NCBI RefSeq assembly: GCF_021869535.1
Contig: NW_026262626.1
Location: 10,416,001-10,480,000, forward strand
Source: Mytilus californianus
Taxonomy: Eukaryota
DNA: 64,000 nt
Direction: 5' to 3'
Under the pieces are notes generated by a model. The model saw nothing but the letters and a program-made list of their open reading frames with translations. It did not search any database and was not told the origin of the DNA. This document shows positions 1-21,420 of the stretch, one piece after another. Positions within the stretch are counted from its first letter, which is position 1. Each line of letters starts with the position of its first letter. The position numbers and the translations under genes were made by a program.

Positions 1-39
1 CTAAATTAAATCATGTATTAACAATATATTTGTATGTAT

Positions 40-1164: not shown

Positions 1165-1545
1165 TTTTCTGTGTCCAAGCATCACAACTCCTGCAAATCA
1201 CTCAACCAGAATGAAACTAAAGCTCAATCTGTACATTCTTATGATATGACCATGTATGATAATACCAATATCATATCTACTGATTCAGAAATATCAGAAA
1301 AAAGTGTAGAAAACACATAATTTCAAGCAATTTTCTATGTCAAAGGGGGTGCAACTTCGGCATAAATCGCTCAAGTGGACAAAAACTCATACTTGATCTG
1401 TAACTTCTTATAATATGACAAATTATGAAATGTCTAATCCATCAATTCAGGCATTACAGAAAAAAGTGCAGAAAACTTACTGGATGGACACACGGACCAA
1501 GTGCAACCTTCGTCTTCTGTAAAAAAACAGGAGTGCTTAAGCCTC
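1165..1545 (+). mobile_element. Degenerate HINE-like element
   Basis: Two ~160-bp-type units followed by GGATGGACACACGGAC. Confidence 0.45.
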
Positions 1546-1574
1546 GCATCAGTAAATATTTCCATAGTACAAAC

Positions 1575-1675
1575 CTTATTTATTGCCTGACATAAAACTT
1601 CATCTCCTTTGTGCCCATTAACTTCTACTGATCCTAAAAATCGTAACTGGAATCTCCAACTTCCATCTTCGTCCT
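1575..1675 (-). CDS. MAPK8IP1: JIP1-like scaffold, start of PTB domain
   Basis: tttatag|AGGACG...AATAAG|gtttgt, 101 nt, phase 1-0; FQLRFLGSVEVNGHKGDEVLCQAINK matches the JIP1 FLGSV...HKG..VLC motif. Confidence 0.9.
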
Positions 1676-2367
1676 CTATAAATATCAGGAAAAATAATTA
1701 AAAAGTATGTCAATTTATTTGTTTTTGTAACTATGTATAATAGTAGGTCTCTCTTATAAATAACTATCAATGGGATATAAGCAACAAAATACATTCTGAT
1801 ATGTGGCAGTCAGACAAACTTTAGGTAATAGCCAACCAAACCACTTTATAGCAGGCTTGACAGTATTATTAAGTTAATAAATAGCTAGAAAACATGAGTA
1901 AGTATAGGATCTAACGAAAGTTCACCTCACTGCACTTTAATGTGCAAACTCACAAACACAGGAAGAGACAATGGTTGAAATAACCAGCCAGTGTCTCAAT
2001 TGCACTGTACAATCTTTATCCCCCCCCCTCAAAAAATTTAATGGCCTAAAAGAAATTACCCCTGCTTTTTGGTGGGGTTCGTGTTGCTCAGTCTTTAGTT
2101 GTCTATGTTGTGTTTTGTACACTGTTGTTTGTCTTTTGGTTTTTTCCTTTTTTTCCATGAAGCTGTCAGTTTATTTTCAAACTTATGAATTTGGATGTCC
2201 CTTTTGTATCTTCTGCCTCTCTTTAATATTTTAGAAAATACAAGCAACTAGATAAGATACAAAAATATATCCAATAGTTAAATCAATGGATATTGTCTTC
2301 AATGTCGATTAAATGAGCTATCAATCAGTTTAGTTGCAAATAAAGTGCACTTAGCACCTTAAATTAC

Positions 2368-2448
2368 CTGTTTCTTCCTCTAAGAACTGTAAATCTGTTG
2401 CATACATTGATGGGAATATTCCTTGTTGTCCTGATCGTAAATTGACAC
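2368..2448 (-). CDS. MAPK8IP1: JIP1-like scaffold, C-terminal half of SH3
   Basis: ttaaag|GTGTC...AACAG|gtaatt, 81 nt, phase 1-1; GVNLRSGQQGIFPSMYATDL (SH3 GIFP..Y motif). Confidence 0.9.
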
Positions 2449-3232
2449 CTTTAAATCAATAAACATTTATAAGTATATGTCATTAATTTGTCATAAATTA
2501 TTGCTTTTATTTTTTTTTTTTTTTTTGTAGGTAAGACATTTTTACCTTTTACCTATTTTAGATTTATCAGAAATGCCTCAAAATTTAAACTTCAAACAAA
2601 TATATATAAATCTTTGCAGCAATAGTTTTAGACTTGAGGTTACATATAAAAATAAATTTTCCATTTACAATTTTCAATTTATGTTGTATGCAAGTGAATA
2701 CAGTTTACAATGTAAACATAAATATCTGTTTCATTGCAACATGACAACAAAATTGATTGCAAAATGAAAAAAAAAACAACTAGTGTAACCCAAACAACAG
2801 TTGACATACCTGTCCCAAGTTAAGGATTTTTTCAGCGCTTGTTTTTCCGTTCTGATATATGATAGTCTGTTGAATTTTTTCACAACTTATTTAAGAGCTT
2901 GTCATGCAGTGTTGTTGCAAATTTACTGGATTTTGATCTCTATATATGTTTATTTTGATTAATTTTTATTAATGGGTTGCCGTCTAATTGATTTTTCCCG
3001 AATCCTTTTTATAAAATTCATAAATGAAAGAAAATACTACATTTAAAACGAACTCCCAAGATTTTTTTTTTAAGTAAATAAAAATACCCAAATTTTTCAT
3101 TACTTGACTGCATAATTATGTGTAATCCATGTGAAGAAATCTCAGATACCTTATGTGACATACAAATTTTAGTACATTCTAATAATATATTGAGAAATAA
3201 AATATAATTTATGTCCATATATAAGGACAAAC

Positions 3233-3406
3233 CTTCACACCAAAGATCATCACTGGTTTTTGTTACATGGAGGGGATCTCCTATTTCTATCTCCACTTCG
3301 TCTTTATGTCTTGGTATAAATCTGTGCATTCCTCTGTGGGTTACTTCCAAATCTAAATAATTAACACCAGGGTAACTAGACGATGACCTTCTCCTTGAAC
3401 CTGAAC
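3233..3406 (-). CDS. MAPK8IP1: JIP1-like scaffold, N-terminal half of SH3
   Basis: ctaatctgtacttcag|GTTCAG...GTGAAG|gtttgt, 174 nt, phase 1-1; THRGMHRFIPRHKDEVEIEIGDPLHVTKTSDDLWCEG is the JIP1/Aplip1 SH3 signature. Confidence 0.9.
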
Positions 3407-3626
3407 CTGAAGTACAGATTAGGAGGTTATTATAGATAACTATTTAACATTTTCCATATCAGCCTTGGCATCAGTCCTCCTTGTCTCTTAGATCAAGCCT
3501 GAGAGCTTTAGTTCGAGGTCTGATATGGATCAAGGACTGGTTCCATTGACAATAGGGTAAGTATTATATGTAGAACTCTGTGCATTCTTTGGGAATATGT
3601 GTACATTTGATAAATTTAAAACATAA

Positions 3627-3953
3627 GGTTTGGTACCATTAAACATTTAAACCCGCTGCAACTGTTTGCACCTGTCCTAAGTCAGGAATCTGATGTTCAG
3701 TAGTTGTCATTTGTTGATGTGGTTCATAAGTGATTCTCGTTTCTCGTTTTTTATATAGATTAGACCGTTGGCTTTCCCGTTTGAATGGTTTTACACTAGT
3801 AATTTTTGGGGCCCTTTATAGCTTGCTGTGTGGTGTGAGCCAAGGCTCCGTGTTGAAGACCATACTTTGACCTATAATGGTTTACTTTTACAAATTGTTG
3901 ACTTGGATGGAGAGTTGTCTTATTGGCACTCATACCACATCTTCTTATATCTA
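3627..3953 (+). mobile_element. Abundant repeat 'family B' (ends CATACCACATCTTCTT)
   Basis: Near-identical inverted copy at 7213-7541; other copies or fragments at 4800-5045(+), 17488-17860(-), 29946-30330(-), 35500-35590(+), 47190-47535(+), 63520-63665(+). Confidence 0.8.
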
Positions 3954-6189
3954 TATAATCCTTAAATCAAAGTGCTTGTGAGCACTAAAGGATAAAGATT
4001 GCATTAATTTTGCAAACGGAACTAAAAATTAAACATTGCATTGTATTAAGGTAGGGGGTGTGTCTTAATGTTTGACTATAGATTTTTCTTCAACTTCTGT
4101 AAAAGACTTCTGGGTCAATGTACTTCCAAATTTCTATATAAAAACAGGGGTCAGTTTATTTCCTTAAAATACATTAAAATTAATGAAATCAGATATTTTA
4201 TAGGGGTTATATAGGGGAAACTTAAATTTTTCCTTATTCAGAAAATATTAAACAATAGAAATGGTTAAAATTCAATGAGAGAATTGCTTGTCATATATAC
4301 TTCTGAAATATCAAATAAAAATAGGTGGTCTTATTGTAAATACACTTAAAAAAAATTTAATTTTTTAACAGTTTAATCAATAAATTGCAAGCTTTAGATG
4401 TTTCTGTTGAATATAGAATGATACTTGGTAAAATATTTTTAAACCAAAATATTTTTTTGCAACTTTGCCCAGAAGGGATGCTCAGAAAGAGACACTGGAT
4501 CTACCGTAAGCATTGTAGGGCAATACCATGAATTGGAGTCCCTAATTGAAGTTGAACAAAATACAATTATGGACAGAGAAGATAACTCCAATTCTAAATA
4601 TTACTTTAACAATGAAATCATTGATAATTTGTGAATAGATACTAGATTCATGCACCATGCTCAATTGATGTGATTTTCTTGACAAGTATGGTTATAACAT
4701 CATTTTATAACTTGAACATTTGAGAATATATTTCAATGATAAATTTCTGGAAATGTTAACAGCCAAGTTAGGAGCCTTTAGTACAATAGGTGTTGTTAGT
4801 TCATGTCTGGCATAATTTATTTTTGTAAATTGTTTTGTTATAAATTAGGCCGTTAGATTTCTCGTTTGAATTGTTTTACATTTTTTCATGTCAGGACCTT
4901 GTATATCTGACTATAAAGATACGGTATGGGTTTTTCTCATTGTTGAAGGCCGTACGGTGACCTATAATTGCTTATATCACCTAATTAGAACTCTGGTGGA
5001 TAGTTGTCTCATTAGCAATCATATGACATCTGCTTATTTTTATATAGATAGGATGTACAGAATGTTGTGCCGAATTCACTATGTTTTGTTTTTTTTTTCT
5101 CAAAAGTAGTGACAAAGTCTGGAAAATTGATAACTATTAAGCCAGCCACATAAGGGTTTTGATTTGGGTTAATGCAATCCTTACCCCCAAAAAAACATAA
5201 GTTTCTGAAATTAAATGAAAGGATAGTTAATCAATGTATCAAATTTAACCTCAAATAATTGAAGAAGATCTATTTGAAATATCCACAAAAAAGGGAATAT
5301 CTTTAAAAAAAAATCACTAATAGATATGATTTTTAGTACGAATATATAATATCAATATTATCAATAAAATGACCCTACATATCTTAGAAAAAATAAATAT
5401 TGATGCTTATAAAATATATCAATTCTTACAGTGCAAAAGACACTTTTCAGATCAGAGTTTCTAAAACAGTCAAATTATTATTTGAAACACATATTTAGTC
5501 TATACGATAAACTTTAGAATCTACAGGTGCAAAGCTGAATTTTACGAAAATTTTAGTTAGATTCTATAGGGTTGTATATATAATTTTTACAGACTCGACA
5601 GCATTTTCACAAGCCTTTGCTGGTGGGCCTGTGGTTGATCGCAAAGACTGCATATTATAGTAATTCAGTATTTTGATAATGCACGTGTGACGACTCATGT
5701 GTGCTGACACTTCCACCAAACTCTGTAACACACAGTGTTCATGTAAACAATGTTGTATATTAAACATAGTTCATAGAAATTTGGTTGTCTCTATGATATG
5801 CTATGGGATATAAAAAACATTTTTGGTACATGCTCTTTTTCTTATAATAAAAGTCCAGATAGAAATTCTCTGATTAGTCAAAGCAGTACTACACTTGTTT
5901 TTTGTTTTGTTTTTGGGTTTTTTTTGGGGGGGGAGAAGGGGGAGGGGGCAGTTTTAGACTATTAAAATAGTTTGTGTTTTTTTGTCATTCTAATGGTCCT
6001 TCAAATTCATTAACTAATCTCTTCCTTAATATAGATTTACAATAAATTTCTGGATGTTAAAATGCCATCAACAAATCACCCAGTTACTAAACAAAAATTT
6101 ACTCAAACAACTTGGTGCGAACTTAAAGGATCCTGGCCTGATATTTTGGCAAGCAAGATTTTTACAGAAAAATCAATGCACAATCTGTT

Positions 6190-6442
6190 AATGATTGATT
6201 GCTTGGTGTTTAACTCCACTTTCAGCATGCTGGCTATTTCATGGCGGCTAGTTTTTATTGGTGGAGGAAGCCACATTACGTGGAGAGAAGCACAGACCAT
6301 CTACAGGAAAACTGGTAATCCTAGTCAATTAAGATCAGATTCAAAAACACAATGCAGAAGTGGGGTTCTTACTCACAACCTGTGTTGATAGGCTAGTGAT
6401 GACTGTACAGAAACTACTTAAACCACTAGGGCACCGAGGGCC
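6190..6442 (-). mobile_element. tRNA-headed SINE, family 1
   Basis: Reverse complement colinear with 47629-47877. Confidence 0.8.
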
Positions 6443-6513
6443 TTACAGTCTGTTACTTGTTACCTTTAAACAAAAATCACAAAGAAGAATTATAACAGGT
6501 TCTGAATACATAC

Positions 6514-6858
6514 CATCCGAATCTCTTCTGTCTCTTCCGGATGCTGATGCCACAGATAAATGTTTTGTCTCAACAGTTGAATCCTCTTCCAAGTATATAT
6601 TATTAGAATTTAGATATGGTTTTGTGTTCTTTGAAACACTGTTTGTAAAGTGTGAACATTTCAACTCTTCTAAATATTTTCGACTAAATTTTGGATATAT
6701 TTTGTCATTAGCAGATGACTGTTTTGTTACAGTAGGTTCACTAGGTAAAAACACATCGTCCTCTTCAGAATCAGTTTTAAGTAGAGCTTCTTGCAGTTCG
6801 TCAGCAAGACATTTCTCATTTTTAACTGTTGGCTTGTCTTCTTCTACTGGTAATTCAG
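6514..6858 (-). CDS. MAPK8IP1: JIP1-like scaffold, acidic low-complexity linker exon
   Basis: ttcattacag|CTGAAT...CGGATG|gtatgt, 345 nt open, phase 1-1, compatible with both neighbouring exons. Confidence 0.75.
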
Positions 6859-7212
6859 CTGTAATGAAGATCAATTCCAATCACAATACTTAAATCATGA
6901 CTAATTTTTAATCAAAATATTAAAATCATGTTTAATTCTAACAAAAATACTAAAATCAAATTTACATCATCTTAAAATCATTATTTGACAAATATCAATT
7001 CTGATAGTTTGCCTTATAATGTGGCTAAGGTTTTATTGGCTATAATCAGATACAGAATTAGTAACTTGTTCCAAACAGAAGAAGATATTAAATACCTAAG
7101 ACAAGGAATTAAATAACAGTATGGGTACTCAAGTACCGATCAACAATTATTGCTTCATGTTGATTTAGTTTATGATACTGTTAAGCTCTCTATAACTTTT
7201 TAGAAAGGTTAA

Positions 7213-7690
7213 TAGATATAAGAAGATGTGGTTTGAGTGCCAATGAGACAACTCTCCATCCAAGTCAAAATTTATAAAAGTAAACCATTATAGGTCAAAG
7301 TACGGTCTTCAACACGGAGCCTTGGCTCACACCGAACAGCAAGCTATAAAGGGCCCCAAAAATGACTAGTGTTAAACCATTCAAACGGGAAAACCAACAG
7401 TCTAATCTATATAAAAAAAACGAAAAACGAGAAACACTTATGAACCACATCAACAAAAGATAACTACTGAACATCAGATTCCAGACTAAGAACAGGTGCA
7501 AACAATTGCAGTGGGTTTAAACGTTTTAATGGTACCAAACCTTCATCCTTATCTGAAACAATAGTGTAACATCACAACATAGAAAGACACACTATAAAAT
7601 ATCAATTGAAATGGCTTAACTCAATCAAAAGACATATTAACACCAGTGAACATACACTGAACAAATAAATTTGATCTATGATACAATGTA
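7213..7690 (-). mobile_element. Family B repeat, inverted relative to 3627-3953
   Basis: Reverse complement aligns base by base with 3627-3953 with few substitutions. Confidence 0.8.
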
Positions 7691-9539
7691 AATGCAAAAT
7701 AAATGTACATGTATCAAGATAATTCAAACCAAAAACTAAATCAAGATTAATTTTGAATAAAAATACTTAAACCAAGATTATTTCCAATTAAAATACCTAA
7801 AGCAAAACATTTCCAATTATCCTGTTAATGTTTACTCAATCCCATTTCCAAAGGCATTTCACATGAAAGAAAACTAGAGTCTCACATGGCATCGTATTGA
7901 TTATTTGATTACTATGCCTAAATTGTATGGAAATCTCCTTATTTTCAAATACATTGCAAAAAAAGACTCTTTCTAAAGGCCATACTGACTTCACCTGTTT
8001 ACCATACTAATCAAATAACCAATAGTTGAAAATGGCCTTGCAGAGAGCCTAGATGCAAACTACATTTGCTCGTATGCCAGGCAAAAGTTCTCAAGATGAA
8101 TCCAAATTAAAAAAAATTTCATAGCCTCCTATTAAATTAAATTCAACACTAACGTCTTATTAAATTAATCGCTTTTGATGGGGGGAAAGGAGAAGGTTCA
8201 CAAAGGGTTAAAATTGGCTCTTAGATTTTGATGTTTTTTTTAATCAGGCCCAAATACTACAATATTGACATAGAAATAGTTGTGATATTACTATTAATAC
8301 AATATACTTCATTTTTGCATATCACATTAAAAATAACTAAGTTTTGACTCCTCAAGTATGCACTATCAGCCTTCACGATTAACTTTTGAGTCCACAAGCC
8401 TGAAGCTCAATTTTTTTAAATTTTAGTTGGATTCTGTTGGCTTGTAGAGGGAGTTTTACAAGCCCGAAAGCAATTTTACAAGCATGGGCCGTAGAACTTG
8501 TGGTTAAGTGTGAAGACTGCACTATTTGTGTTGTAACGTCAGCTTTGGTCAAATTTTCAATAATTCTTAACAGTTTTTTGCATAATTTACTTTGGCAGCC
8601 ACCCATGATCAAGAAAGTTTTTGTGTCTAAGGAATCAATATCATCATTGGCAACTTTTTGTTACAGAACATTATGGATCCTAGGTTGCGGCCAAAGATTT
8701 CCTCAAGCTTTTAGGTCCGAAAAATGCACTAAATCATAGTAATTTAACAATATATCCAAAATGTGCTGATTCTGAAGCCAAAAATGTACACTTATGAAGA
8801 GATTTACTTTAACAAAGAAGTAAATAGTTATTAAAGGTACCAGGATTATAATTTAATAAGCCAGACTTTTGAAATATACCCATTTAAGAACCAAATTATA
8901 GCAACTTTGAAATTTTATGATAAAGTTGAAATTCAAGGCCATATTTGGCCTAAAGTGAACCTTGTCCTTTGACCATATGATATTTGTATGCCTGCCTGAA
9001 CCAAAAAAATCTTTTAGTATAAAGTATCCCATAAAGGAACATTTCTATTATATTTTCATTCAGTTTGTCAAGTGAATTTCCAGATCTACTGTGGATTCAT
9101 TTATTTTCGTGGGTACCAATTTTCATGGACTAACTAAAAATTGTATTTCCGTGGATATTTGATTTCATGGTTTTACAAAAGTCGGCATACAAGCCTTTAA
9201 AAAATATGTAGAACATTGAACATATAAATTTGTGGTTCACTTGTACCCAAGAAATCCACGAAATTTTTTTTTCCCATGAATAATAATGGTATATATTTCC
9301 TTTATACTCCAATGTTAAAATAAATAACTCATTTGAGTTGTTACAGGTTGGTCTGTCTGTCAAAGCAACAACAGTGAGTTACAATTTATATAAGTATCAA
9401 AAAGGGAACCTTTCGTTAATATTTGTTTTTTATTGCTTTAGTGGTTTGTATGATTTTTCTTACATATTTTCTTTAGGATCCAATAAAAGTTTAAGTTCCA
9501 TACTCACGCCCATATTGGTTGGATAATTTGAACCATAGT

Positions 9540-10720
9540 AATTATGTGAGCCAAAATTTGTTCCTGTGAAAAAAGTTCCAGTGGAACTTATATCACAGGA
9601 AATATGTTCTGGGAGAACTTTTTTCACAGGTAATTTCTATATAATTTGTTCCATCTCTATAAAATAAGTTCCACACTTTACCTGGTGAAATAAGTACCGG
9701 GTTGGTGAAATTTGGTCCTTACCTAGTGAAATAAGTTCCGGGTTTATGAGATTTGTTCCTTACCTGGTGAAATAAGTTCTGAGTTTGTGAGATTTGTTCC
9801 TCACCTGGTGAAATAAGTTCCTTGTCTGTGAAATATGTTCCACTTGTTAAACAAGTTATCTTAAATACTGAGCATTTGTCATCAGTGAGTTTAAAGTTAT
9901 CATTCAAGTGCATTATAAAAATAAGTATTATATTAATAATATAATAGATTAAAAGTGTAAATCATCCAGTTTGGATCCTATGGAGTATAGGAAATGTTTA
10001 ATTATATACTCTGTAAAAAATATCTAAATGACACTTTTGAACCAGAAAAGATTAGAATAAGAAAAATCATTCAGAAAAAAAGTATAGTTTAAGAGGAACA
10101 TATGTACTAATTTGAAAAGGACAAAGTGACTTGATCATTTATAAATATCAAAAGACATGTAGAAAAAAAAGACACACTCTTTTGAAACTGTGCCATGTCC
10201 TAAGTACATGTATGACTAGAACACGGGGCCATATGACAGTTAAGTTGAACTGTTAACAGGAACCAAGGAGGAATACCGCATAAAACATAAATACAAATTA
10301 TGATACATTACCATCGCTTTTATTTCTTATCTTCATCCTATAGTTACAGTCATGCCTTCAATTGCAAATGTATCCCATGCAAGTACACACAGTACAGCAT
10401 TTAGCTTGCATTATAATTTAAGTGTAAATGTTTCGGTGTGCAATAATGATTGAGCGAAACTTATTCATTAGTTTCTAAGAAATATTTACATGTTCGTTTA
10501 AAACTAATGTCACAGGAACTTATTTAAAACTTTTTAATATTAATTGAAACAAAATTCATGGAGCTATGATTTTTGCTCTGGAACTTATTTCACATTTGGC
10601 CAAAAAATTAGTTCCGGAACAAATTTTTCAGAGCTGGAACGTATTTTCTGTGATATAAATTCGGGTGGAACATATTTCCTATGAAATTTGTTCCGGCGGA
10701 ACAAATTTTTTGTTACAATT
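9540..10720. mobile_element. Foldback-like element with long imperfect termini rich in GTTCC/GGAAC repeats
   Basis: AAATTTGTTCC motifs in opposite orientation at the two ends; internal ~40-bp tandem ACCTGGTGAAATAAGTTCC at 9680-9830. Confidence 0.5.
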
Positions 10721-10875
10721 ACACTTGAAAAATTTCTCACATATTTTCTTTAACTGCCTAAACAGCACTTAAAAATATAAATAAAAAATATATTTCCCAA
10801 AAGTTCCAAAGAAATATTAAGTTCTAAGATGTAGACTATATTGGTTGGGTGGACCACCCATGTCACAATTCTTAA

Positions 10876-11360
10876 CAAGAAATGATTGTGAAGGGATGCG
10901 GTTACGAAGTCTCCCAAACAAATCCCCTTAAGTATAAACCCCTAAGGACTTTCCCTATTGAATAAATTGAGAAAAAAAAGTTCAAGGTCAAAGGTCAAGG
11001 TCATAATTGAACATTGACCTTTCGACCTTTCAGTATGTTCCCATGGTCATTACTGAAGACCCCATGTGTCTATCACTAACTGTTCTCAAGTGATAATTAT
11101 TTGATAATAAAACATTTTAAAATCCCATAGGGTTCTATAGTAAACTCCTCCTTTCTTTATGCCCCTCAAAGTACCCCTTTATAAACCCCATTGCACAAAC
11201 AAAACCCTGATTACACCACTAGGCATGTTAGTCTAACATATTGGGGATCCCTAAGTTAATCTGACAAACGGTTTTGGAGACTGGGTGCGGACAAGTTCAA
11301 ATTTAAAAGAAAAGAAGAAGAAGAAAGTCACAACACTCACTAGTCAATATGTTTCACAAG
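10876..11360 (+). mobile_element. Degenerate HINE-like element
   Basis: AACAAGA start, AAGGTCAAAGGTCAAGGTCA core, (AAG)n near the end. Confidence 0.45.
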
Positions 11361-11640
11361 TTTTGATTTTTAATCTAACCTTGTTACCATAGTAATTGAC
11401 CAAAATGAACCATAGTTTCATTTCTCATTTAGTACTATATATGGAATCTTTCTGTTATACATTTGTATTTATTGTCTCAGAGCTTGAAAACTAGAAGATC
11501 TAGAACATGGGTTGTAACAATGTCACCCATATTCATTATCAAATTGGAGGCAAAGTTAAAAATTTTAGTTCAACCTTCAGGAAAATATCTACCCAAGATT
11601 TGGCTTACTTGCAAAACAGAAGTTCAAAGTTTTTATAAAG

Positions 11641-11788
11641 GAGGGTCTGGATGGGGAGTCCTGTATTTCTGTATTCTCTAATTTTTTAAGCCATTATTCT
11701 CTAGTCTTCTTTTTTTGGTCCATTTTTCTCTATTCTTTATATTTTTTGTCTATTATTCTCTATTCTGTAAACCCCCATCCACACCCTC
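11641..11788. mobile_element. Short MITE with TIR GAGGGTCTGGATGGGG
   Basis: Inverted termini and internal ATTCTCTA repeats; relatives near 20670, 40137-40234, 41516-41697, 52090. Confidence 0.7.
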
Positions 11789-12982
11789 ATAAAGGATGAT
11801 CGATAAATAAGATTCACTAAAATCAAATTTATTTAAATTGCATAATCTAAGTTATACATGTACTAGGACGTGTCTTTAGTGAATAAAATAATATTGTAAT
11901 TACATAACAGTATTCTGAATCGATGGTATCAATTTACTAATTATGATTAATCAAATCATAAAAACAGTATTAAATGAATTATTTCTTATTAATGAATACT
12001 CATTTTTCTACTTGTTATAACCTTATAAAAGCTTTATATTCAGAAATTAATTTCAGTAACGTGCAATAGAAATGGAAACATTAAACAATATTAATAATTC
12101 ACTAGAGGTGTAATGAAACACTGATGGTATCGATCTTGTCCTAATTGACACCAGGTTATTGACATTTTAGAAATGGAATAAGGTAAACAAATCCTAGTTA
12201 AATCGAATGTATATTTTTCTCTCATTTAAAATAACAGCAATTTATTAAGAGGTACTTCAAGGTGAGTTTACAAACTTCAGTTGCATACTTAGTCAATGAT
12301 TATTTTCAAAGCATAAACTATAACTTTATATAAAACGAAAATGACTTTAACTGCAGATTTAAATTTAATCAAGGCATCCTATTTAAATTTGGTCAAGACA
12401 TTGATAGTCGCTTAACAAAAGGTGTTGTACCCCATATGCAGGGTTCTAAATACCATTTGGAAGAATAACCCTCTTACAAGTCTAGACAAATACCTGAAAC
12501 ACTTTGTTAAATTGTAAACCATAAAATTCCCCATACTGTAGAAAATCAACCCACTTATTATCTTTGTGAAGATTCAGATATACTGTGGGTTCATTTATTT
12601 TCGTGAATACGAATTTTCATGCATTAAGATAAAAATCTATTTTCGTGGATATTTGATTTCATGGTTTTGTCAAAGTCTGCATACAAGGCTAAAGAAAAAT
12701 GTGTCCTTGAACGTTTACATTCATGGTTCACCTGTACCCACGAAATCCACGAAAATTGGTATCCGAGGAATAATAATGAATCCATAGTAATGCGAAAGCA
12801 AACTGTTACTCTAATGTTGTGATATTAAGTGTCCTACAATGTTTCATGGGAATACATTACATCAAACAAACAAAAAATTGGGTCATTTTGGTTGGTTTGT
12901 AATGATGGGTTGATATCTCAGCGACATTCATCTTTTCTGTTCATACATAGTGCTCCTGTTTAACATAAACAACTAAAAAATA

Positions 12983-13834
12983 CTAAATAAGACTAAATAA
13001 ACAGCTGCGCCATGAGCCCATGATACGCCTGTCGTCTTGTGTGTGAATTTTTATGCAATAATCATAAATAGTTTCTGACATACTGCGTGACATGAGAAAA
13101 CCCCCCTTTTTTAAAAAAAAAACTCAATATCGCTAAAATAAAATTTTGAATCAAAACCAAAAAGTATACAGATCTTAAGATTAATATAACTAAGAAGTGT
13201 GTAAAATTTTAAGCAATAATCATACATCGTTTTTGAGATAAGGCGCGACATGTGAAAACCCCCCTTTTCAAAAAAAAAAAATCAATATCTCTAAAATAAA
13301 ATTTTGAATCAAAACCAAAAAGTATACAGATCTTAAGATTAATATAACTAAGAAGTGTGTAAAATTTTAAGCAATAATCATAAATCGTTTTTGAGATACA
13401 GCGCGACATGTGAAAAACCCCTCCCCCTTTTTTTACAAAATACTCAATAACTCAAAAATAAAATTTTGAATCATCACCAAAAAGTATACAGATCTTAAGA
13501 TTAATATAATTAAGAAGTGTGTAAAGTTTTCAGCAATAATCATAAATTGTTTTTGAGATACGGCGCGACATGTGAAAAAAAACCACACACCTGTTTTAGT
13601 TACTAAGTCCTGTAACTCAAAAAGTTTTAATCTTATTTTCACCAAAAAGTATACAGATCGTTTGACCATCACAAGAAACAACTATATTAAGTTTCATGAA
13701 ATTTGGATAAGTCGTTCTCAAGTTACGATGCGACATGTTTACGCCGGACAGACAGACCGATAGACGGATAGACGGACAGAAGACATTTGTATACCATAAT
13801 ACGTCCCGTCAAAATTTTGACGGGCGTATAAAAA
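12983..13834 (+). mobile_element. Helentron-type non-autonomous element (HINE/DINE-1-like) with ~160-bp internal tandem array
   Basis: Four units starting at 13085, 13243, 13401, 13563; (GACA/GACG) microsatellite; 3' hairpin CCCGTCAAAATTTTGACGGG followed by CGTATAAAAA. Confidence 0.8.
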
Positions 13835-13932
13835 ACTGGAAAATTACTTAAATGGGAATAATATTAGATCTGTATCACACTAAAGTAGTAAATATCAATA
13901 AAATGAAATAATTATCACTTGAAGGTCATTAC

Positions 13933-14062
13933 CATTACATTGTCTAGGAATTTCTGGGAGTTTTCTTGGCCTCTTGGGAATTTTAAAACCATTTGAACTT
14001 TGGCATCGTCTGTTGTTTGGTAAATACTTATGAATTGTTTTGTCTTGAGATTTGTCTAGATC
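13933..14062 (-). CDS. MAPK8IP1: JIP1-like scaffold, exon with RKLPEIP motif
   Basis: tttatttcag|GATCTA...GTAATG|gtaatg, 130 nt, phase 0-1, bridges the phase of the 15.3 kb and 6.5 kb exons; KIPKRPRKLPEIPR. Confidence 0.75.
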
Positions 14063-14561
14063 CTGAAATAAAGATAAAAATTTGCATTAATTTTAGTAGC
14101 ACTTCAAAACACCATCAAAAATGTTTTTCCAAAGTTATTCAATTTTACAGCATTTTTACGTCAGAATTGGTAATGTAATAGATGACATTCTACTTATTAT
14201 ATTAAGGAGCATAATGACTCACAAATCAACACATGATCTGTTAAATTTTGATAAATATATCGATTGGGACATAAAATAGTTGATTAGAAATCAGATATAC
14301 AATCTATAACGGAAAACATTTTCTTAAATGGAACATCCTACAATAACAACTGTTGGCATCCAGTGATCAAGGTCAGTCAAGTCAAAAGTATATCGTAATA
14401 ATATTGATAAATTACTTACTGACGTCAATTAGTTAATATTCAAGTAATATTTCAAGGGGGTATTCTTTAATGGACATATTTGTCGAATGGGACCAAATCA
14501 ATAATATATTTCTAAAACAGCAGAAAAAAATAAAATATGTGTGATTCATATAATAACAATG

Positions 14562-14773
14562 TACTGTGGATTCATTAAATTATTCGTTGGATACCAATTT
14601 TCGTGGATTTCGTGGGTACAGGTAATCCATGAATTTAAATGTTCAACAAATTATAGATTTTCTATAAAAATGTATGCAAACTTTAGCAAAACCACGAAAT
14701 CAAGTATCCACAAATGCAAGTGTTTCTTAATCCAAGAAAATTGCTACCCACGAAAATAAATGAATCCACTGTA
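14562..14773. mobile_element. Tc1/mariner-type MITE, TIR CTGTGGATTCATT, TA target
   Basis: TA|CTGTGGATTCATT...AATGAATCCACTG|TA; further copies at 9087-9290, 12581-12789, 35647-35844, partial 25975-26130. Confidence 0.8.
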
Positions 14774-15324
14774 CCTTATAAGGCAAAAAACTAGGTAGGA
14801 GATTATGGAAAAATATTACTGTTTCATTCTTTAAAAGAAATTATGTTGGCTTTCATGTTATTTGTTTTCATCATTCAGCAGAGCAGTTTATCATTGTAAT
14901 GTAATATAGTTGATTATACAGCAAGAAACATATGTATAATTCACCCTGCAATTAGCTATTGTACAAATAACAGGTATTCAAATAAATGTTTGCTTTATTG
15001 AGAGGGAACAGTAATGTTAAAAATTTCTGTTTACATCACAGTTTATTTTGTTGCTCTCTTCATGCTCCATGGTTTAGTCATGTCTATTTATATAAAAATC
15101 AAAGACTGATAAAAAGTTAAATGGAATAGTGTCACAATTAAATTGCTGGATAAAAACAATATATGAGCTCACTACTACTGAAACAGTGGAAACAGTGTTT
15201 CTAAAGCTAATATAAATAAATTTTATATGTACCAACAATGCACATATAGTTTTTTTTTATTTTGACCCTGAATCCCTTTATGTAGTTCTGTGTCTATTTA
15301 TGAAGTAAAACAACATAAACATAC

Positions 15325-15622
15325 CTCAGAAGTTACAGAACTTGTCCTTGCATCAGATTTATTTTCTTGGCATTCTAGATACTGTGAATTTATAACATTA
15401 TTTAATTTCTCTAGAGCTTTCTGTTGGGAAACCAGTATATCTTCTTTATGTTGGTACCCTAATTTATCCTCTGTTCTTTCAATGTGATTTTTAGGTCTAC
15501 ATCTGTCAACAGTTTTTTGTTTTGTTTGTGATAAGCATGAGAGTATATACTGTTGTTTGGCTGAGTAATCACTACCACCATCTTCTTCATATGCATTATC
15601 AGGGCTGATGTCATGAACAAGT
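15325..15622 (-). CDS. MAPK8IP1: JIP1-like scaffold, exon beginning (R)LVHDISP
   Basis: ttttttcag|ACTTGT...TCTGAG|gtatgt, 298 nt, phase 2-0; RLVHDISPDNAYEED resembles the vertebrate JIP1 N-terminal FRLTHDISLEEFEDED. Confidence 0.8.
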
Positions 15623-16150
15623 CTGAAAAAAGATAGAATTATCAGGGCTGATATCATGAACAAATCTGAAAAAAGAACAAATTTTTATCAGGGCTGGTAC
15701 CATGAACAGTCATGAAAAAGTCTGAAAAAAGAAAAAATATCAGGGCTGATTTCATGAAAAAGTCTGAAAAAAGAAAGAATTATCAGTGCTGGTATCATGA
15801 ACAAGTTGAAAAAAGTATGAATTATCAGGCCTGATATCATGAACATGTCTGACAAAAGATAGAATTATAAGGGTTTGTATCCTGAACAAGTCTAAAAAAT
15901 AAGGAATTATCAGGGCTGATATCATAAACATGTTCATTAAAGAAGGAATATTCATGGCTGATATCATGAACAAGTCTGAAGAAAATAATGAATTTTTAAG
16001 GGCTAATGTCATGAACAAGTCTGAAAAAAGTATGAATTATCAGGGCTGATATCATGATCAAGTCTGGAAAAAAGGAAGAATTATCAGGGATGATATCATG
16101 AACAAGTCTGAAAAAAGATAAATTATCAGAGCTAGTATCACAAACAAGTT
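15596..16150 (-). repeat. ~43-bp tandem array derived from the JIP1 intron/exon junction (resumes at 17160-17300)
   Basis: Unit CAGGGCTGATATCATGAACAAGTCTGAAAAAAGATAGAATTAT, about 12 copies plus about 3 beyond the HINE insertion. Confidence 0.9.
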
Positions 16151-17158
16151 TGAATAAAAGAACAGACTTCCAATGTCTACCGCATTGATCATATTTTATC
16201 TATCCAAGGTATAAGGGCAATAACTAAAAAAAAACACTTTTGTTTGTTCTTTATAACAATTATAAATATCTTAGAGAAATGAAGGCTTCAGAGCAAATGC
16301 AATTTTCCGTATAATCAATATTTCCAAGGGACATAACTCTTTTAAAAATAACTGATTGCATTGATTTTCATATTTGTCTGAAACATTGATAATACAAACC
16401 AATAAAATAAATTTCATAAAAATCTGGAAAGAATTGTACACATGAGATTGCTAACAATGCAATTTTCCATATAATCAATATTTCCAAGGGACATCACTCT
16501 TTTAAAAAAAATTGATCGGCACTGATTTTCACACTCCTCAAAAACGTATAATATAAATTTCACAAAAATCTGGCAAGAATTGTACACATTAGAGTGCTCT
16601 TAAGGCAATTTTCCATATAATAAATATTTCCATGGGGTATAACTCTTTTAAAAATAATTGATCGGCACTCATTTTCCAACTCATAAAAGATATTGCTGAT
16701 ATAAACCTATGATATAAGTTTCATAAATTTCTGGCAAGAATTTTACACATGAGAGCGCTAATATTGCATTTTTCATATAATCAATATTTCCAAGGGGTAT
16801 AACTCTTTTAAAAATAATTGATCAGCACTGATTTTCGAACTCGTCCAAGACATTGCTGCTATAAACCTTTGATATAAGTTTCATAAAAATCTGGAAAGAA
16901 TTGTACACATGAGAGCACTAATGATGCAATTATCCATATAATTAATGTTTCCAAGGGGCATAACTCTTTTAAAAATAATTGATCAGCACTGATTTTCGAA
17001 CTCATCCAAGACATTGCTAATATAAACCTATGATATAAGTTTCATTAAAATCTGGCAAGAACTGTACATGTCAGAGCGCTAACAAGACCGGACGGATGGA
17101 CGGACGGTCATCCGGTATTTCTATGTCCCCTGCAATGTGTTGCGCAGAAGACAAAAAA
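16150..17158 (+). mobile_element. HINE-like element with five ~150-160-bp units, inserted in the JIP1 acceptor array
   Basis: Repeated CAATTTTCC...AAGGG.CATAACTCTTTTAAAAA; (GGAC)n at ~17087-17107; imperfect terminal hairpin followed by an A-run. Confidence 0.7.
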
Positions 17159-17487
17159 AGAATGAACTATCAGGGCTTATGTAATGAATAAGTCTGAAAA
17201 AAAAAAGAATTATCAAAGCTGATTTCACGAAAAAAGTCTAAAAAAATAAAGAATAAATTATCAGGGCTGTTATCATGAACAAGTCTGAAAAAAAGAATGA
17301 ATGATATAAAAAAAGATGTACATGTTTGAATATTTATCATATCCAAGTAATTATCTACCTTGCTTTTCTATTCTTTATCAGTGAAGGAACCTTTAACCAT
17401 AACACACTAATCTGAACTGTACAATTTTTCTTCAAGAAAGGCAGACCAATAAAAAACCTTTAAGATACCAATTTAAGGACTATAAAA

Positions 17488-17860
17488 ATAAGCTGATGTG
17501 TTATGATTGCCAATGATACAACTATCTTCAAACTAAGTTCAAATGAAATGGATGTAAACAATTAGAATTTAGAGGCAATGGTACAGTCTTCAACGATGAG
17601 AAAAACCCATACGGTATAGTTGGCTATCAAAGGCCCTGACATGAAAAAATGTGAAAACTAACAGCCTAATTTATAACAAAACAACTTACGAAAAACAAAT
17701 ATGACAGACATGAACCAACGACAACAACTGAACTACAGGCTCCTGACTTGGGATAGGCACATAAAGAATGTGTGTGTGTGTGTGCAGGGCGGGGGGAGAT
17801 ATTTGTGAGAGCTCAACACTCCCCAAACCTGGGACAGTGGTGTAAAAATCAATTACTATG
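17488..17860 (-). mobile_element. Family B repeat copy
   Basis: GATGTGTTATGATTGCCAATGA...GTCTTCAACGATGAG...CCTGACTTGGGA. Confidence 0.7.
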
Positions 17861-18676
17861 GGCTTAACTCAAAAGATATGAGGCACAAAAACAACTAATA
17901 TAAAAACAATAGACACAAAGCACCGAAGAGTCAACATATTTCTTACGAAGTCGCTGGATCATTATGAAAAACAAAACGATACTGTACACAAATAAGATTC
18001 TACTGTGATTTCATTTTTGTCAAATTTCTGATGTGAATACAGCTGGAATTGCATACAGGTTGCTACATGTAGGCCCTGATGTTGGTGTATGTGCAAATAA
18101 CTGTTGTTCAAAAGAAACTCATCTAAAACAGTAAGTTATACCTGTAGCAGAGAGCTTCTTATTAAAGTAAAAAAAAACATATTATGCAAGGAATTTGGAA
18201 CTTCATTCCAGTTTAGAAGTTAAAAAATACAACTGACATATAATTTACTTTTCCCAAATGATCAATTATCAGGGCTTTAAAATAAGATAAATTTGAAATA
18301 TTTTCAAAGATTATTTATGAAATATTTTACAATTTCAGCTAGGCTACAGGCCTTGGAGTAAATTGCATAGACGGACTACTGACACCCCCCCCCCCCTTTT
18401 TCCCCCACTTTCCTATTTTTCATATTTAACCAAGCATGAGTAAAAGACATCCTCCCAGACAGTATGATTATATGAAACTGTAAGTCCCGGAAGAATTAAT
18501 TATAAATGCTATACATATATACATAATATTGTGAACCCAAATTTTCGCATATGAACATGTATATATGTAAATATTATGAAACAGTCATTGCAGGTATATA
18601 AATATGAACAATATGCTATCCTGATGGCAGACAACACACAATAAACATTACAAAATAAACAACAACATCAAAATAC

Positions 18677-18720
18677 CTGAATGTCAAGTCTGAATTCAGA
18701 GGTCTATGTAATCTTAACAT
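18677..18720 (-). CDS. MAPK8IP1: Candidate first coding exon of JIP1-like gene (MLRLHRPLNSDLTFR)
   Basis: ATG...ACATTCAG|gtattt, phase 2, joins to give TFR-LVHDIS; L.LH...FR resembles vertebrate LGLH...NFR. Confidence 0.5.
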
Positions 18721-20257
18721 AATTCCAAAATTAGACTATTAAAATGTTCAATGTTAAGCTAGTGTTATCCTTATTCCATCATTAAGTGTCATATGCTCTT
18801 TTCCTTGCATGAATTAAAATTTGTGTGTGGGCTGAAGCATCCATTGACGTCTACATAAGACAATATATTACAGAGACTAAATCAATAACCTTTACCATAT
18901 TCCTACTGGCTGGCTTCTCTGATTATGATAATTTGTAGAGAGAAATCAATATCATGTGATGTTAAAAGGAAAAATCTAATTGTTTTATTAAATCAGACTA
19001 TTTACTGTTCATTTAATGATTTATTTGATTATGACAACCTTAACAGGCCATGCTTTGTTAATTCATTGATGGATTTAGTGGAATATTAGTAAAACAAATC
19101 TGAATCAGCGAAATCCCACAGCATTTTTTTATTTGAACATATTAAGTGGAATTTTTTTTTTTATTACTTTTTCAAAGAGGAATTTTTCATGTTTTAAAAC
19201 TTTTATTGAAACCAAAATTTTGTTGGAATGAAATAATTATCATGTTTTGTGGTGAGTTATCTCCCCTTTTCCATTTGGGAAAGACTGTACAGTGTATATT
19301 GTATGATATTTTGATAAAAATTATTATTTTTTTTGGGGGGGTTAAAGATGAATAATCGAAACTAATACATGTATATAAAAGAAGATGTGGTATGATAGTC
19401 TGTTTGACCTCAATAAATCTTCAAAACTTATTCTAAAGTTTGAGTAAGTTAATTAACTGCCTATGTACAAATACATTGGAACCTGGACTAAAAGTATATA
19501 TTTCTGAAATTCTTTTGAGTAACTCAATCAAATATCAAATGATGTTAGATATGAGTCTAGAACTCTCTCAGTGTGTTTGTGGTAAAACTGGTTGCTTGTT
19601 TGCCATGAGTGCAGGTTGGATTCCAACTGGTTCAAATCAAAGGCTTTACTGGTAAAATACATGCCCTTGCACCTGACGTTTAGAAGACAGAAACAATTGT
19701 AGCAAGTAAAAACATTTTCAGATGGATTAAATAAGCCATTATTACCTTTGAGCAAGTAGGATATATACATCAATGTAACTTATACAAAGAAAAAAAACTT
19801 TTTTTTTCATCTAGCAGCTGCCTAGGAGCCAAACCTGCCATTGCTGCCAAATATGGAAAATTAACATATGCACTATGGAAATTTTCCCCTAAAATTTATG
19901 ACCTCAACCCAAAATTTAGTAGTCTTGGCTAGCGGGCCCCTATCAACCCTTTTTTCAAGCATTTTCATCCCATATTATCATGTTCATGTCCAGAACATGG
20001 CCTTAATATTGCCCACTGGATGCTAAACATTCATCTATGGGCAAGTTGAATCACTTGATTCAAATGTCATAGTAATTCACAAGTTATATTGAAATTAACA
20101 TACTAGTAGTTCTGCTTCTATTCAAATGTTTATGGATGTCATAGCTATAATGTTGTATAATATTAAATTGTTTATCAAGAAAAATGCCTCAGAAGCTTAT
20201 TAAACTATAATATTTAAGATGTGAATTTTGACCATACTTACTGCATTATAAACATAA

Positions 20258-20513
20258 GGGAACGACCATTTAACTTCAAGGGGGGGAGGTTTAGGGTTTT
20301 ATATGGTTTTTTCCTAAAAAAATATTCTGTCCCCAATTTGATGAAAAAAATATTGTGGTCAAGCAGACGACAAAAACAAATATTCTGAATCCAGATTTTC
20401 CTTATAGTGTAAAATTTTGAGAAAAATAATTTGATTAATAGCGTCGAAAAACTAAAAAAGAATTTTTTGACTTAAACCATAACCACCCCCCTTGAAGTTA
20501 AATGGTTGCTCCC
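20258..20513. mobile_element. PIF/Harbinger (Tourist-like) MITE
   Basis: TIR GGGAACGACCATTTAACTTCAAGGGGGG / CCCCCCTTGAAGTTAAATGGTTGCTCCC flanked by TAA on both sides. Confidence 0.85.
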
Positions 20514-21420
20514 TAAGAATTAAGATGTGGTACCGATTGCCAATGAGACAACTCTCTTCCAGAGACCAAATGGCAAAGTATAAGTAAAGCTGACAAAAGT
20601 AATCTTGAACAAAACTTTAAAATTTTTCTTTCCAATTTTCATCAATTTTCAAGAATACCAAATCATAAAGGAGGGTCTGGATGGTGTTTACAGAATACAG
20701 AATAATGAGCCAAGACTACAGAGAAATGGGCTAAAAAAAAAAAGAATGGAGAAAAATTGGCCAAAAATTAGAACAGAAATTAATGGGGTGCTAAAATATG
20801 AATAATAGAGAATAATGGCCAAAATAAAGAAAAAATTCATGAAAAATGGTCTGTTTAATAAAGAAATGAAGACACCACCCCCTTTTACAAAATGTGTACA
20901 TTAAATTCAGTGTGTTTGGAAAGTCATAAGCCTGATACATTATCTCTAAATCAACAAAATGGAAATAACACTTTGTAAATTTTGCCGAACTTTTCTGTGT
21001 AAAGATAATGATTTGAAGTTATGTCTGTTGAGATAAAAAAAGCATATAATAAAATTATATTTTAAATAAAAACAATTATCCAACTAGAACAGCTATATTA
21101 ATTGATGCATTTCAAAGAAGACATTTTTAAAATGGGATACCCACATAATAATAAACTAGACAAATATCATAAATCTGTGTTTCTATCTATCAAATCTGTA
21201 CTTATTGATATTTGTCAACCATTACAGTACATGAAAGAAATTTCTATAATCTTTAATTGTTTGATTTTTGGTGTATAATGCCACTTTCAGCGCTATTGGC
21301 TATTTCGTGGGGGCCAGTTTTTATTTGTGGCGGAAGCCAGAGGTGCCCATAGAGAACCAAAAGCTACCTACATTTGCGTGAATTTTAATTTTGACAGGTA
21401 TTACGTTTGCACAAATTTAC

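What the first reader, a model, noticed from the sequence alone, without database searches (positions are those of the whole stretch)
15596..17300. Tandem array of about 15 copies of a JIP1 3' splice site stacked upstream of the real acceptor
On the gene strand each ~43-bp unit reads pyrimidine tract-CAG|ACTTGTTCATGATATCAGCCCTG, i.e. the true acceptor (15622) plus the first ~25 coding nt (LVHDISP). Many units keep the tract and AG (exon starts would be 15665, 15721, 15763 and so on). I checked the nearest ones: +43 frameshifts, and +99 and +141 are in frame but hit TGA, so only the last AG is productive. The spliceosome must bypass a ladder of near-identical decoy acceptors. Inference: array length could act as a copy-number-tunable splicing/NMD rheostat on a JNK scaffold gene, which is an undescribed use of a minisatellite.
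Basis: partly seen in the sequence, partly recalled or inferred. Interest (0 to 1): 0.75.

Follow-up and report, generated by a model that had tools for sequence, protein, structure and literature searches.

The report
Repeated splice-acceptor copies in mussel JIP intron
A mussel JNK-scaffold (JIP1/2-like) gene carries 15 decaying tandem copies of its intron-1/exon-2 boundary inside the intron, a "mirage" minisatellite of a kind already known from amphioxus and human F7, and the RNA data show only the genuine, exon-adjacent acceptor in use.

Summary
On the minus strand there are 15 decoy units of about 43 bp plus the real boundary. Twelve decoys keep an AG, and every one of them leads to a premature stop. 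RNA contigs from two studies join 15622 directly to 18677, which fixes the true acceptor and a 3054-nt intron. No RNA contig covers the array.

The gene is JIP1/2-like by its SH3 domain. LVHDISPDN is conserved coding sequence in five other taxa that have a single acceptor. The exon was therefore copied into the intron, not the reverse.

Mytilus galloprovincialis has the array too, with about 7-8 decoys split by a different element, a reverse-transcriptase fragment. The array is thus older than that species split. Its units are diverged, and their AGs are kept no better than neighbouring bases.

The "rheostat" reading has no support. Boundary-spanning minisatellites that leave splicing intact are already described: amphioxus "mirages" and the human F7 IVS7 VNTR. 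This is an ordinary new example, possibly the first in a mollusc. Minor use of the decoys could not be tested because read depth was only about 1.

The parts
18677..18854 (-). Exon 1 as far as RNA contigs show it. It holds 5' UTR plus a 44-nt CDS (ATG at 18720-18718, reading MLRLHRPLNSDLTF + AG). The donor GT is at 18676-18675.
   Evidence: RNA contigs X2 record 9 and X4 record 16 run from 18677 upward and join it to 15622. Sequence and frame were read. The exon is conserved in M. galloprovincialis.
15623..18676 (-). Intron 1 (3054 nt). It contains the whole array and the inserted element.
   Evidence: The 15622|18677 junction appears in two RNA assemblies. GT..AG ends were read.
17153..17304 (-). 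Distal block of the array: 3 decoy units (17284, 17237, 17193). They are the most diverged, and all keep an AG.
   Evidence: TRF, unit table, and an independent contig, X15 record 6.
16153..17152 (-). Inserted non-autonomous dispersed repeat (about 1 kb) with about 3.4 internal 161-bp repeats. It landed in the pyrimidine tract of one unit, and removing it restores the 43-bp period.
   Evidence: 5381 candidate copies in the window's own genome, with the scored ones 82-86% identical over the full length. Termini were defined against 5 copies. Read depth there is 1e4-1e5 times the single-copy level.
15623..16162 (-). Proximal block of the array: 12 decoy units directly upstream of the real acceptor. 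Nine keep an AG (16107, 16063, 16020, 15975, 15891, 15848, 15763, 15721, 15665).
   Evidence: RNA depth is 0 across 15650-16049 in X21, X4 and X2.
15641..15645 (-). CTGAT (fits the yUnAy branch-site consensus, with A at -20) inside the last decoy unit. It is the likely branch site of the real acceptor and is a copy of the exon's own Pro-Asp codons.
   Evidence: Sequence and motif distances. Its use as a branch site is inferred, not shown.
15325..15622 (-). Exon 2 (298 nt), LVHDISPDNAYEEDGG...TSE. The real acceptor is cag|A at 15622 and the donor GT is at 15324-15323.
   Evidence: RNA contigs cover 15324/15326-15622 and join both sides. Orthologous ORFs are P0001-P0008.
15575..15588 (-). Purine-rich GAAGAAGATGGTGG stretch at exon positions +35 to +48. 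It is a candidate exonic splicing enhancer present only behind the real acceptor.
   Evidence: Purine fraction at +29..+60 is 0.62 for the real site and 0.22-0.41 for all decoys. GAR motifs number 2 versus 0. Enhancer function is inferred.
3228..3347 (-). Exon that encodes the first part of the SH3 domain of the same gene.
   Evidence: The ten best PDB matches are JIP1 or JIP2 SH3 chains (E 3e-10 to 2e-8). The next family scores 9e-4. Pfam SH3_1 is weak.

Best explanation
This is a 'mirage'-type intronic minisatellite. A roughly 43-bp segment spanning the intron-1/exon-2 boundary of a JIP1/2-like gene was duplicated in tandem in the Mytilus lineage. The segment holds the last 9-15 nt of the intron and the first 28-34 nt of the exon. 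It expanded to at least 16 units and has since decayed largely as neutral intron sequence, picking up a transposable-element insertion on the way.

Only the unit next to the exon is used as the acceptor. How it is chosen is inferred, not shown:
- Each unit carries a full-looking 3' splice site: a CTGAT branch-like motif, a U-rich tract and CAG.
- Only the last unit is followed by real exon with a purine-rich GAAGAAGA enhancer and a 5' splice site. Every decoy is followed 28 nt later by another pyrimidine tract.
- Exon definition would therefore fix U2AF/U2 on the last copy.
- The last decoy unit is not dispensable, because it now supplies the branch site and most of the pyrimidine tract of the real acceptor.
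- Any stray use of a decoy gives a premature stop, and nonsense-mediated decay would remove that transcript.

The array as a whole most likely has no regulatory role.
For: Structure:
- The array and unit anatomy are shown.
- The unit is unique to this locus in the 1.65-Gb genome.

Splicing:
- Two RNA assemblies from different studies join 15622 to 18677, and none covers the array.
- All 12 AG-keeping decoys lead to a premature stop.
- The real site is not stronger by pyrimidine count: 15/20, against up to 17/20 for decoys.
- The purine-rich stretch lies only behind the real site.

Direction (exon copied into intron):
- [LM][VAT]HDISP[DE] directly after ppt-AG is conserved in P0001-P0005, P0007 and P0008 from other taxa.
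- Their loci L010, L011, L012/13, L015 and L016 show one acceptor and no array in 125-1759 nt upstream.
- The array consensus keeps GATATC as in outgroup L011, while the live exon now reads GACATC.

Age and neutrality:
- M. galloprovincialis (L014) has about 7-8 decoys in the same intron, split by an RVT_1 fragment.
- The window's array is split by a different element.
- Units are 55-93% identical, and AG columns are among the least kept.

Precedent:
- In the F7 IVS7 VNTR only the exon-adjacent site is selected (PMC1557585).
Against: - Contigs drop rare variants, and the only raw-read RNA run gave a depth of about 1 on the exon. Low-level decoy use (a few per cent) and its removal by NMD are therefore untested.
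- The selection mechanism (enhancer, exon definition, branch site in the last unit) is inferred from sequence alone.
- Copy number differs about two-fold between two Mytilus species, so the array is not fully static. Nothing here measures whether that affects expression.
- Within-species length variation was seen in one extra haplotype only (X15 contig, same length).
Confidence: 0.8

Rival explanations
1. The decoy ladder is used by the spliceosome at a meaningful rate, produces NMD substrates, and its copy number tunes JIP output as a heritable rheostat.
For: - Twelve decoys keep a branch-like motif, a pyrimidine tract and AG, some with tracts as good as or better than the real one.
- All of them give premature stops.
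- Copy number differs between two Mytilus species: 15 versus about 7-8.
- Minor isoforms could not be assessed.
Against: - Only the canonical junction is seen in RNA assemblies from two studies, with zero RNA depth over the array.
- Decoy AGs are not preferentially conserved. Three are lost here, and the decoy nearest the exon has lost its AG in M. galloprovincialis.
- The units are old and diverged, with no sign of recent homogenisation or turnover.
- Comparable arrays elsewhere are reported as silent (PMC3087553, PMC1557585).
Confidence: 0.07
2. The reverse direction. A pre-existing intronic repeat was partly recruited as the 5' end of exon 2, so the exon derives from the satellite.
For: The first 28-34 nt of the exon are part of the repeat register.
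Against: - The same amino acids (L-x-HDISP-D/E-N) and the same intron position are found in at least five other taxa that have no repeat upstream.
- The SH3 match shows an old, conserved gene.
- The unit exists nowhere else in the genome.
Confidence: 0.02
3. Assembly artefact. The array length is a product of misassembly of a shorter repeat.
For: Repeats are prone to misassembly, and the M. galloprovincialis assembly shows fewer copies.
Against: - An independent short-read contig (X15 record 1, 1491 nt) spans the whole proximal block with 10 substitutions and only 2 gaps. Record 6 spans the distal block.
- The units are individually distinct.
- A diverged transposable element sits inside the array.
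Confidence: 0.01
4. The array has a constructive cis role beyond the last unit. For example, it could act as a landing pad that concentrates U2AF or pyrimidine-tract-binding proteins, raising or gating use of the real acceptor, without the decoys themselves being spliced.
For: - The array carries 15 reiterated U-rich tracts and branch-like motifs next to a site whose own tract is average.
- It has persisted since before the split of two Mytilus species.
Against: - There is no conservation signal in the tracts, whose first half is the least conserved part of the unit.
- Copy number and layout differ freely between species, and two transposable-element insertions are tolerated.
- Outgroups splice the same boundary without any array.
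Confidence: 0.08

Closest known systems
Amphioxus 'mirage' minisatellites (Adh3, globin BflGb6/BflGb9, troponin C, PGBD5). Sources: Ebner et al. 2010, PMC3087553; PMC3902484; original description Canestro et al. 2002 NAR, cited there but not held.
   Same: - Tandem, minisatellite-size duplications that span an intron/exon boundary.
- BflGb6 duplicates the 3' end of an intron plus the 5' part of the next exon, exactly as here.
- Many units keep AG/GT signals.
- The authentic boundary is the terminal unit.
- Normal splicing is not disturbed.
- Copy number differs between haplotypes there, and between species here.
   Different: - The host is a bivalve mollusc rather than a cephalochordate.
- There are more units: 15 decoys, against 3-6 for BflGb6.
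- The units are older and more diverged (55-93% identical, against 81-100%).
- The array is interrupted by a transposable element.
- No somatic or within-population instability was shown here.
Human F7 intron 7 37-bp VNTR (Borensztajn et al. 2006, PMC1557585)
   Same: - A minisatellite whose terminal unit spans an exon-intron boundary, so the authentic splice site is accompanied by a row of near-identical pseudo-sites.
- The pseudo-sites stay silent, and only the exon-adjacent copy is used.
   Different: - It duplicates the 5' splice site (donor) downstream of the exon, not the 3' splice site upstream.
- Its selection mechanism (5'-to-3' scanning) was shown experimentally. Nothing was tested experimentally here.
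Regulated unproductive splicing coupled to NMD (poison exons and alternative sites)
   Same: Use of any decoy would insert sequence carrying a premature stop.
   Different: - No decoy-spliced RNA was observed.
- The decoy sites are not conserved as such.
- Known cases rely on one or a few conserved alternative sites, not a decaying repeat ladder.
Intron gain or alternative splice-site creation by tandem duplication of an AG|GT-containing segment (the Rogers model, as cited in PMC3087553; cases in PMC2891723 and PMC4974935)
   Same: A tandem genomic duplication across a splice signal creates extra potential splice sites.
   Different: - No new intron or exon has arisen here.
- The intron position is ancient and shared with taxa that lack the array.

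Membership tests
Mirage-type minisatellite (tandem duplication of an exon-intron boundary) | The repeat unit spans an authentic intron/exon boundary, and the real boundary is the terminal unit of the array | tested here: met
   The unit is a pyrimidine tract + CAG + the first 28-34 nt of exon 2. The last unit is the RNA-confirmed acceptor at 15622.
Mirage-type minisatellite (tandem duplication of an exon-intron boundary) | Head-to-tail units of minisatellite size (10-160 bp in the described cases) | tested here: met
   Period 42-43 bp, with 12.9 + 3.3 copies by TRF.
Mirage-type minisatellite (tandem duplication of an exon-intron boundary) | Regular splicing uses the authentic site even though units keep splice signals | tested here: met
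   Two RNA assemblies join 15622 to 18677, and none includes array sequence. This holds for the major product only; minor products are untested.
Mirage-type minisatellite (tandem duplication of an exon-intron boundary) | Length instability or polymorphism of the array | tested here: inconclusive
   Between species there are 15 versus about 7-8 decoys. Within the species, one extra contig has the same length. There is no population or somatic data.
NMD-coupled regulatory alternative splicing | An alternative, stop-containing isoform is detectably produced | tested here: inconclusive
   None is seen in the contigs of two RNA runs. Raw-read depth was only about 1 on the exon, and contigs drop rare forms.
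NMD-coupled regulatory alternative splicing | The alternative splice sites are under purifying selection | tested here: not met
   The AG columns are among the least conserved. Three of 15 AGs are lost here, and the nearest decoy's AG is lost in M. galloprovincialis.
JIP1/JIP2 (MAPK8IP1/2, APLIP1-like) scaffold gene | JIP-type SH3 domain | tested here: met
   The ten best PDB hits are all JIP1 or JIP2 SH3 chains (E 3e-10 to 2e-8). The next SH3 family scores 9e-4.
JIP1/JIP2 (MAPK8IP1/2, APLIP1-like) scaffold gene | C-terminal PID/PTB domain | tested here: inconclusive
   The gene runs off the window's start. One candidate 36-aa piece (571-681, minus strand) gave no Pfam hit.
JIP1/JIP2 (MAPK8IP1/2, APLIP1-like) scaffold gene | JNK-binding motif (RPxxPTxLxL type) | tested here: inconclusive
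   A strict regular expression over the three gene-strand frames of 1-15325 found nothing. No looser or profile search was done.
JIP1/JIP2 (MAPK8IP1/2, APLIP1-like) scaffold gene | Conserved N-terminal F-R-L-T/V-H-D-I-S motif | tested here: inconclusive
   Present here (TFR|LVHDISPDN) and in P0001-P0008. That vertebrate JIP1/2 begin with a like motif is my recollection and was not tested against a named JIP sequence.

The most novel reading that the evidence does not exclude
The decoy acceptors are used at a low but real rate, their products are removed by NMD, and the difference in array length between Mytilus lineages or individuals measurably sets JIP1/2 mRNA output. That would make this a heritable, copy-number-graded splicing brake.
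Probability: 0.05. Interest if true: 0.7.

Novelty: new member of a known kind. Interest (0 to 1): 0.3.

Why it matters
As it stands, this is a clean natural example outside chordates of a minisatellite that reiterates a complete 3' splice site 15 times while the spliceosome still picks the exon-adjacent copy. It is the acceptor-side mirror of the human F7 donor VNTR.

It could serve as a ready-made natural substrate for asking how 3' splice sites are chosen among near-identical neighbours. It also shows duplicated coding sequence (Pro-Asp-Asn codons) apparently taking over as the branch site and tract of the real acceptor.

On the practical side, it misleads gene predictors. The M. galloprovincialis model P0006 starts inside the last decoy unit. 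There is no evidence that the array regulates the gene.

Tried and rejected
- **Pfam on exon 2 and the 6443-6880 exon:** nothing useful.
- **Guessing exon 1 with a donor/ORF regular expression:** failed. The RNA contigs later placed exon 1 at 18677 and upward.
- **Exact-pattern scan of JGI metagenome contigs with a 21-nt core of the unit:** 0 hits, so no extra Mytilus loci came from there.
- **JNK-binding-motif regular expression:** no hit.
- **Pfam on a candidate PID piece:** no hit.
- **Canestro et al. 2002 (PMC117041):** not held. 'Mirage' is therefore cited through PMC3087553 and PMC3902484.
- **P0005's contig:** could not be fetched because the file is too large.
- **Higher-order repeat:** an 85-bp period reported by TRF is no better than the 42-bp period (76% versus 77% matches), so I rejected a higher-order repeat.
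- **Recursive splicing:** rejected, because the bases after each AG (ACTTGT) do not regenerate a 5' splice site.
- **Spliced models:** Searches were done exon by exon, by reference. Exon 1 CDS and exon 2 were concatenated only inside a local script, to read frames and stops.
- **Earlier findings:** the look-ups returned only this same finding.

Full report
**What is there**

Read on the minus strand, the sequence between 17304 and 15595 holds a head-to-tail repeat of about 43 bp. Its unit is a U-rich tract, then CAG, then ACTTGTTCATGATATCAGCCCTGATAAT. TRF reports 12.9 copies at 15595-16162 (77% matches, score 591) and 3.3 copies at 17153-17304.

A fuzzy search for the 28-nt core gives 16 units in register, at spacings of 42-52 bp. 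Their first exon-like bases are 17284, 17237, 17193, then 16149, 16107, 16063, 16020, 15975, 15933, 15891, 15848, 15806, 15763, 15721/15711, 15665 and 15622. The last unit is the start of a real exon, so there are 15 decoys.

- Twelve decoys keep an AG.
- Three have lost it: 16149 reads caa, 15933 reads tga, and 15806 has the G deleted.
- The unit occurs nowhere else in the 1.65-Gb genome of the window.

**The gap in the array is a transposable element**

The roughly 1 kb between the two blocks (about 16153-17153) is a dispersed repeat with about 3.4 internal 161-bp repeats.

- The window's own genome gave 5381 first-look candidates. The scored copies are 82-86% identical over the full length.
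- Aligning five copies with their flanks fixes the termini.
- The element sits inside the pyrimidine tract of one unit. Taking it out restores a normal 43-bp unit (17193 to 16149 is 1044 bp, which is 43 plus about 1001).
- The array therefore existed before this insertion.
- Short satellite-like arrays carried by non-autonomous elements are typical of bivalve genomes (titles and abstracts of PMC7492417 and PMC3879986). I did not classify this element further.

**Gene and splice sites**

RNA-run contigs from two different studies both align to 15324/15326-15622 and then continue directly at 18677. These are X2 record 9 and X4 record 16.

- This fixes the acceptor at 15622, the donor of the upstream exon at 18677|GT, and an intron of 3054 nt (15623-18676).
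- Exon 2 ends at 15325, followed by gtatgt.
- Exon 1 carries an ATG at 18720 with an in-frame TAG upstream. The protein starts MLRLHRPLNSDLTFR|LVHDISPDNAYEEDGG.
- No RNA contig, and no read of the one raw-read RNA run (X21), falls on 15650-16049. Exon depth in X21 is only about 1, so this says nothing about rare isoforms.
- X21 reads lie with the first mate on the + strand only, which fits a minus-strand gene in a stranded library.

The gene is JIP1/2-like. The exon at 3228-3347 matches the SH3 domains of JIP1 and JIP2 in the PDB at E 3e-10 to 2e-8. The next SH3 family is at 9e-4. The PID domain and the JNK-binding motif could not be confirmed inside the window.

**Consequences of using a decoy**

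With exon 1's frame, each of the 12 AG-keeping decoys reaches a stop 10-136 nt after the junction.

- The real site is not the strongest on its face. It has 15 of 20 pyrimidines upstream, against 16-17 for five decoys.
- Most units, including the one before the real site, carry a CTGAT (a yUnAy match) with its A 19-24 nt before the AG.

**Direction and age of the duplication**

A full HMMER search with exon 2 found five short ORFs from other organisms. A word search added three more, including one named Mytilus galloprovincialis.

- All of them read [L/M][V/A/T]HDISP[D/E] immediately after a read-through of a pyrimidine tract and AG. The coding sequence and the intron position are therefore ancestral.
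- Loci L010, L011, L012/L013, L015 and L016 (35-70% amino-acid identity) show a single acceptor. They have no second copy of the core in the 125 to 1759 nt available upstream, and no tandem repeat there. L009 offers only 29 nt upstream.
- Exon sequence was therefore copied into the intron, not the reverse.
- The array consensus keeps GATATC as in outgroup L011, while the live exon now reads GACATC.

In M. galloprovincialis the locus is L014, where exon 2 is 94.3% identical and exon 1 is conserved. The same intron (about 3.3 kb) holds these blocks:

| Position in L014 | Content |
|---|---|
| 7693 | one unit |
| 8104-8227 | about three units |
| about 8228-9850 | 1.6-kb insert with a reverse-transcriptase ORF (Pfam RVT_1, 4e-19) |
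| 9852-10017 | about four units |
| 10018 | real acceptor, tag|A |

The decoy nearest the exon there has lost its AG (cat).

- The array predates the split of the two species.
- It arose after the split from the L015 taxon.
- It now differs about two-fold in copy number between the two species.
- It has been hit independently by two different mobile elements.
- The M. galloprovincialis units keep GCATC after GATAAT, matching exon bases +29 to +33. The duplicated segment was therefore mostly exon: about 28-34 nt of exon plus about 9-15 nt of intron.

**Is the array maintained?**

Aligned units are 55-93% identical to each other. The real unit is the one closest to the consensus.

- Among decoys, the A and G of the AG are kept in about 80% and 60-70% of units. 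That is no better than the surrounding columns.
- The first half of the tract is the least conserved part of the unit.
- This is the pattern of an old, decaying repeat. It does not fit either selected decoys or a rapidly homogenised array.
- An independent short-read contig (X15 record 1) spans the whole proximal block with 10 substitutions and 2 gaps. A second haplotype or individual therefore has the same length, and the array is not an assembly artefact.

**How the real site is probably chosen (inferred)**

The only systematic difference between the real site and the decoys lies downstream.

- From +29 on, every decoy runs into the next pyrimidine tract (purine fraction 0.22-0.41).
- The real exon continues with GCATATGAAGAAGATGGTGG (purine fraction 0.62, two GAR motifs against none).
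- Purine-rich exonic enhancers and exon definition are established ways of fixing U2AF/U2 on the adjacent upstream 3' splice site. I propose that this selects the last copy.
- Because the duplication reached only 9-15 nt into the intron, the ancestral branch site is now more than 1.6 kb away. The real acceptor must use a branch site inside the last decoy unit, most likely CTGAT at 15645-15641. That motif is a copy of the exon's own Pro-Asp codons.
- NMD would remove any mis-spliced product.
- None of these steps was tested.

**Comparison with what is known**

- They occur in Adh3, globin genes, troponin C and PGBD5.
- BflGb6 duplicates the 3' end of an intron plus the 5' part of the next exon.
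- Many units keep AG/GT signals, yet RT-PCR shows regular splicing.
- Copy number differs between haplotypes (PMC3087553; PMC3902484).

In human F7, a 37-bp VNTR whose first unit spans the exon 7 donor gives a row of functional but silent pseudo-donors. Only the exon-adjacent one is selected (PMC1557585).

The present array is the same kind of object on the acceptor side, in a mollusc, and with more and older units. The claim that this is an undescribed use of a minisatellite therefore rests only on the untested rheostat idea.

**Verdict**

The structural reading is right. The functional reading is unsupported and somewhat disfavoured. This is a new member of a known kind.

**Limits**

- Minor isoforms were not tested.
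- No within-species population data were available.
- The species of the window was not identified by any tool. It is a Mytilus about 6% diverged from M. galloprovincialis in this exon.

Noticed in passing
window 18677-18694 versus the unit start (for example 15622-15640): The last 18 nt of exon 1 (TTCAGACTTGACATTCAG) share a 10-nt identity, TTCAGACTTG, with the intron-end/exon-2 junction of the repeat unit (TTCAGACTTGTTCATGA). My rough estimate of the chance expectation is about 0.01. The stretch is conserved in M. galloprovincialis. It may be coincidence, since the terminal TTCAG encodes the conserved F-R, or it may be a trace of older duplication.
   Followed up: partly
window 15534: One contig of RNA run X4 matches the exon up to 15534 and then continues for 255 nt with unrelated sequence. 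Depth in that bin is about twice that of the spliced contig. There is no AG at that point, so it is not an obvious splice. It could be a chimeric contig, a paralogue or a repeat.
   Followed up: no
L014 10001-10315 (M. galloprovincialis UYJE01005965.1): The deposited gene model P0006 ('Hypothetical predicted protein, partial') starts at an ATG inside the last decoy unit (MHLYFR, then LVHDIS). The array has misled the annotation.
   Followed up: partly
window 13039-13578, 38508-39109, 40312-40754: Three more short arrays with periods of 158-161 bp lie in the window. They resemble the internal repeats of the element inserted in the array and are probably further satellite-carrying non-autonomous elements.
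   Followed up: no
window 19396-20537: Hundreds of RNA reads and many contigs join 19395 to 20538, skipping 1142 nt (ends TA..AT). Read depth on both sides is very high. It looks like a high-copy element that here carries a nested 1.1-kb insertion, not a spliced intron of the JIP gene.
   Followed up: no
window 17450-17850: An extremely high-copy repeat lies inside intron 1. Summed contig depth reaches 1.8 million in the DNA-like run X15, and the repeat is present on both strands in RNA.
   Followed up: no
window 41532-42032 (-), 55933-57120 (-), 44550-44760: By eye, one ORF looks like a sorbitol/alcohol-dehydrogenase-type exon (…GGPPHQTIECSGAQ…) and a 395-aa ORF has reverse-transcriptase-like motifs (…FRYIDDVL…). 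A run of N at about 44550-44760 was left untouched.
   Followed up: no
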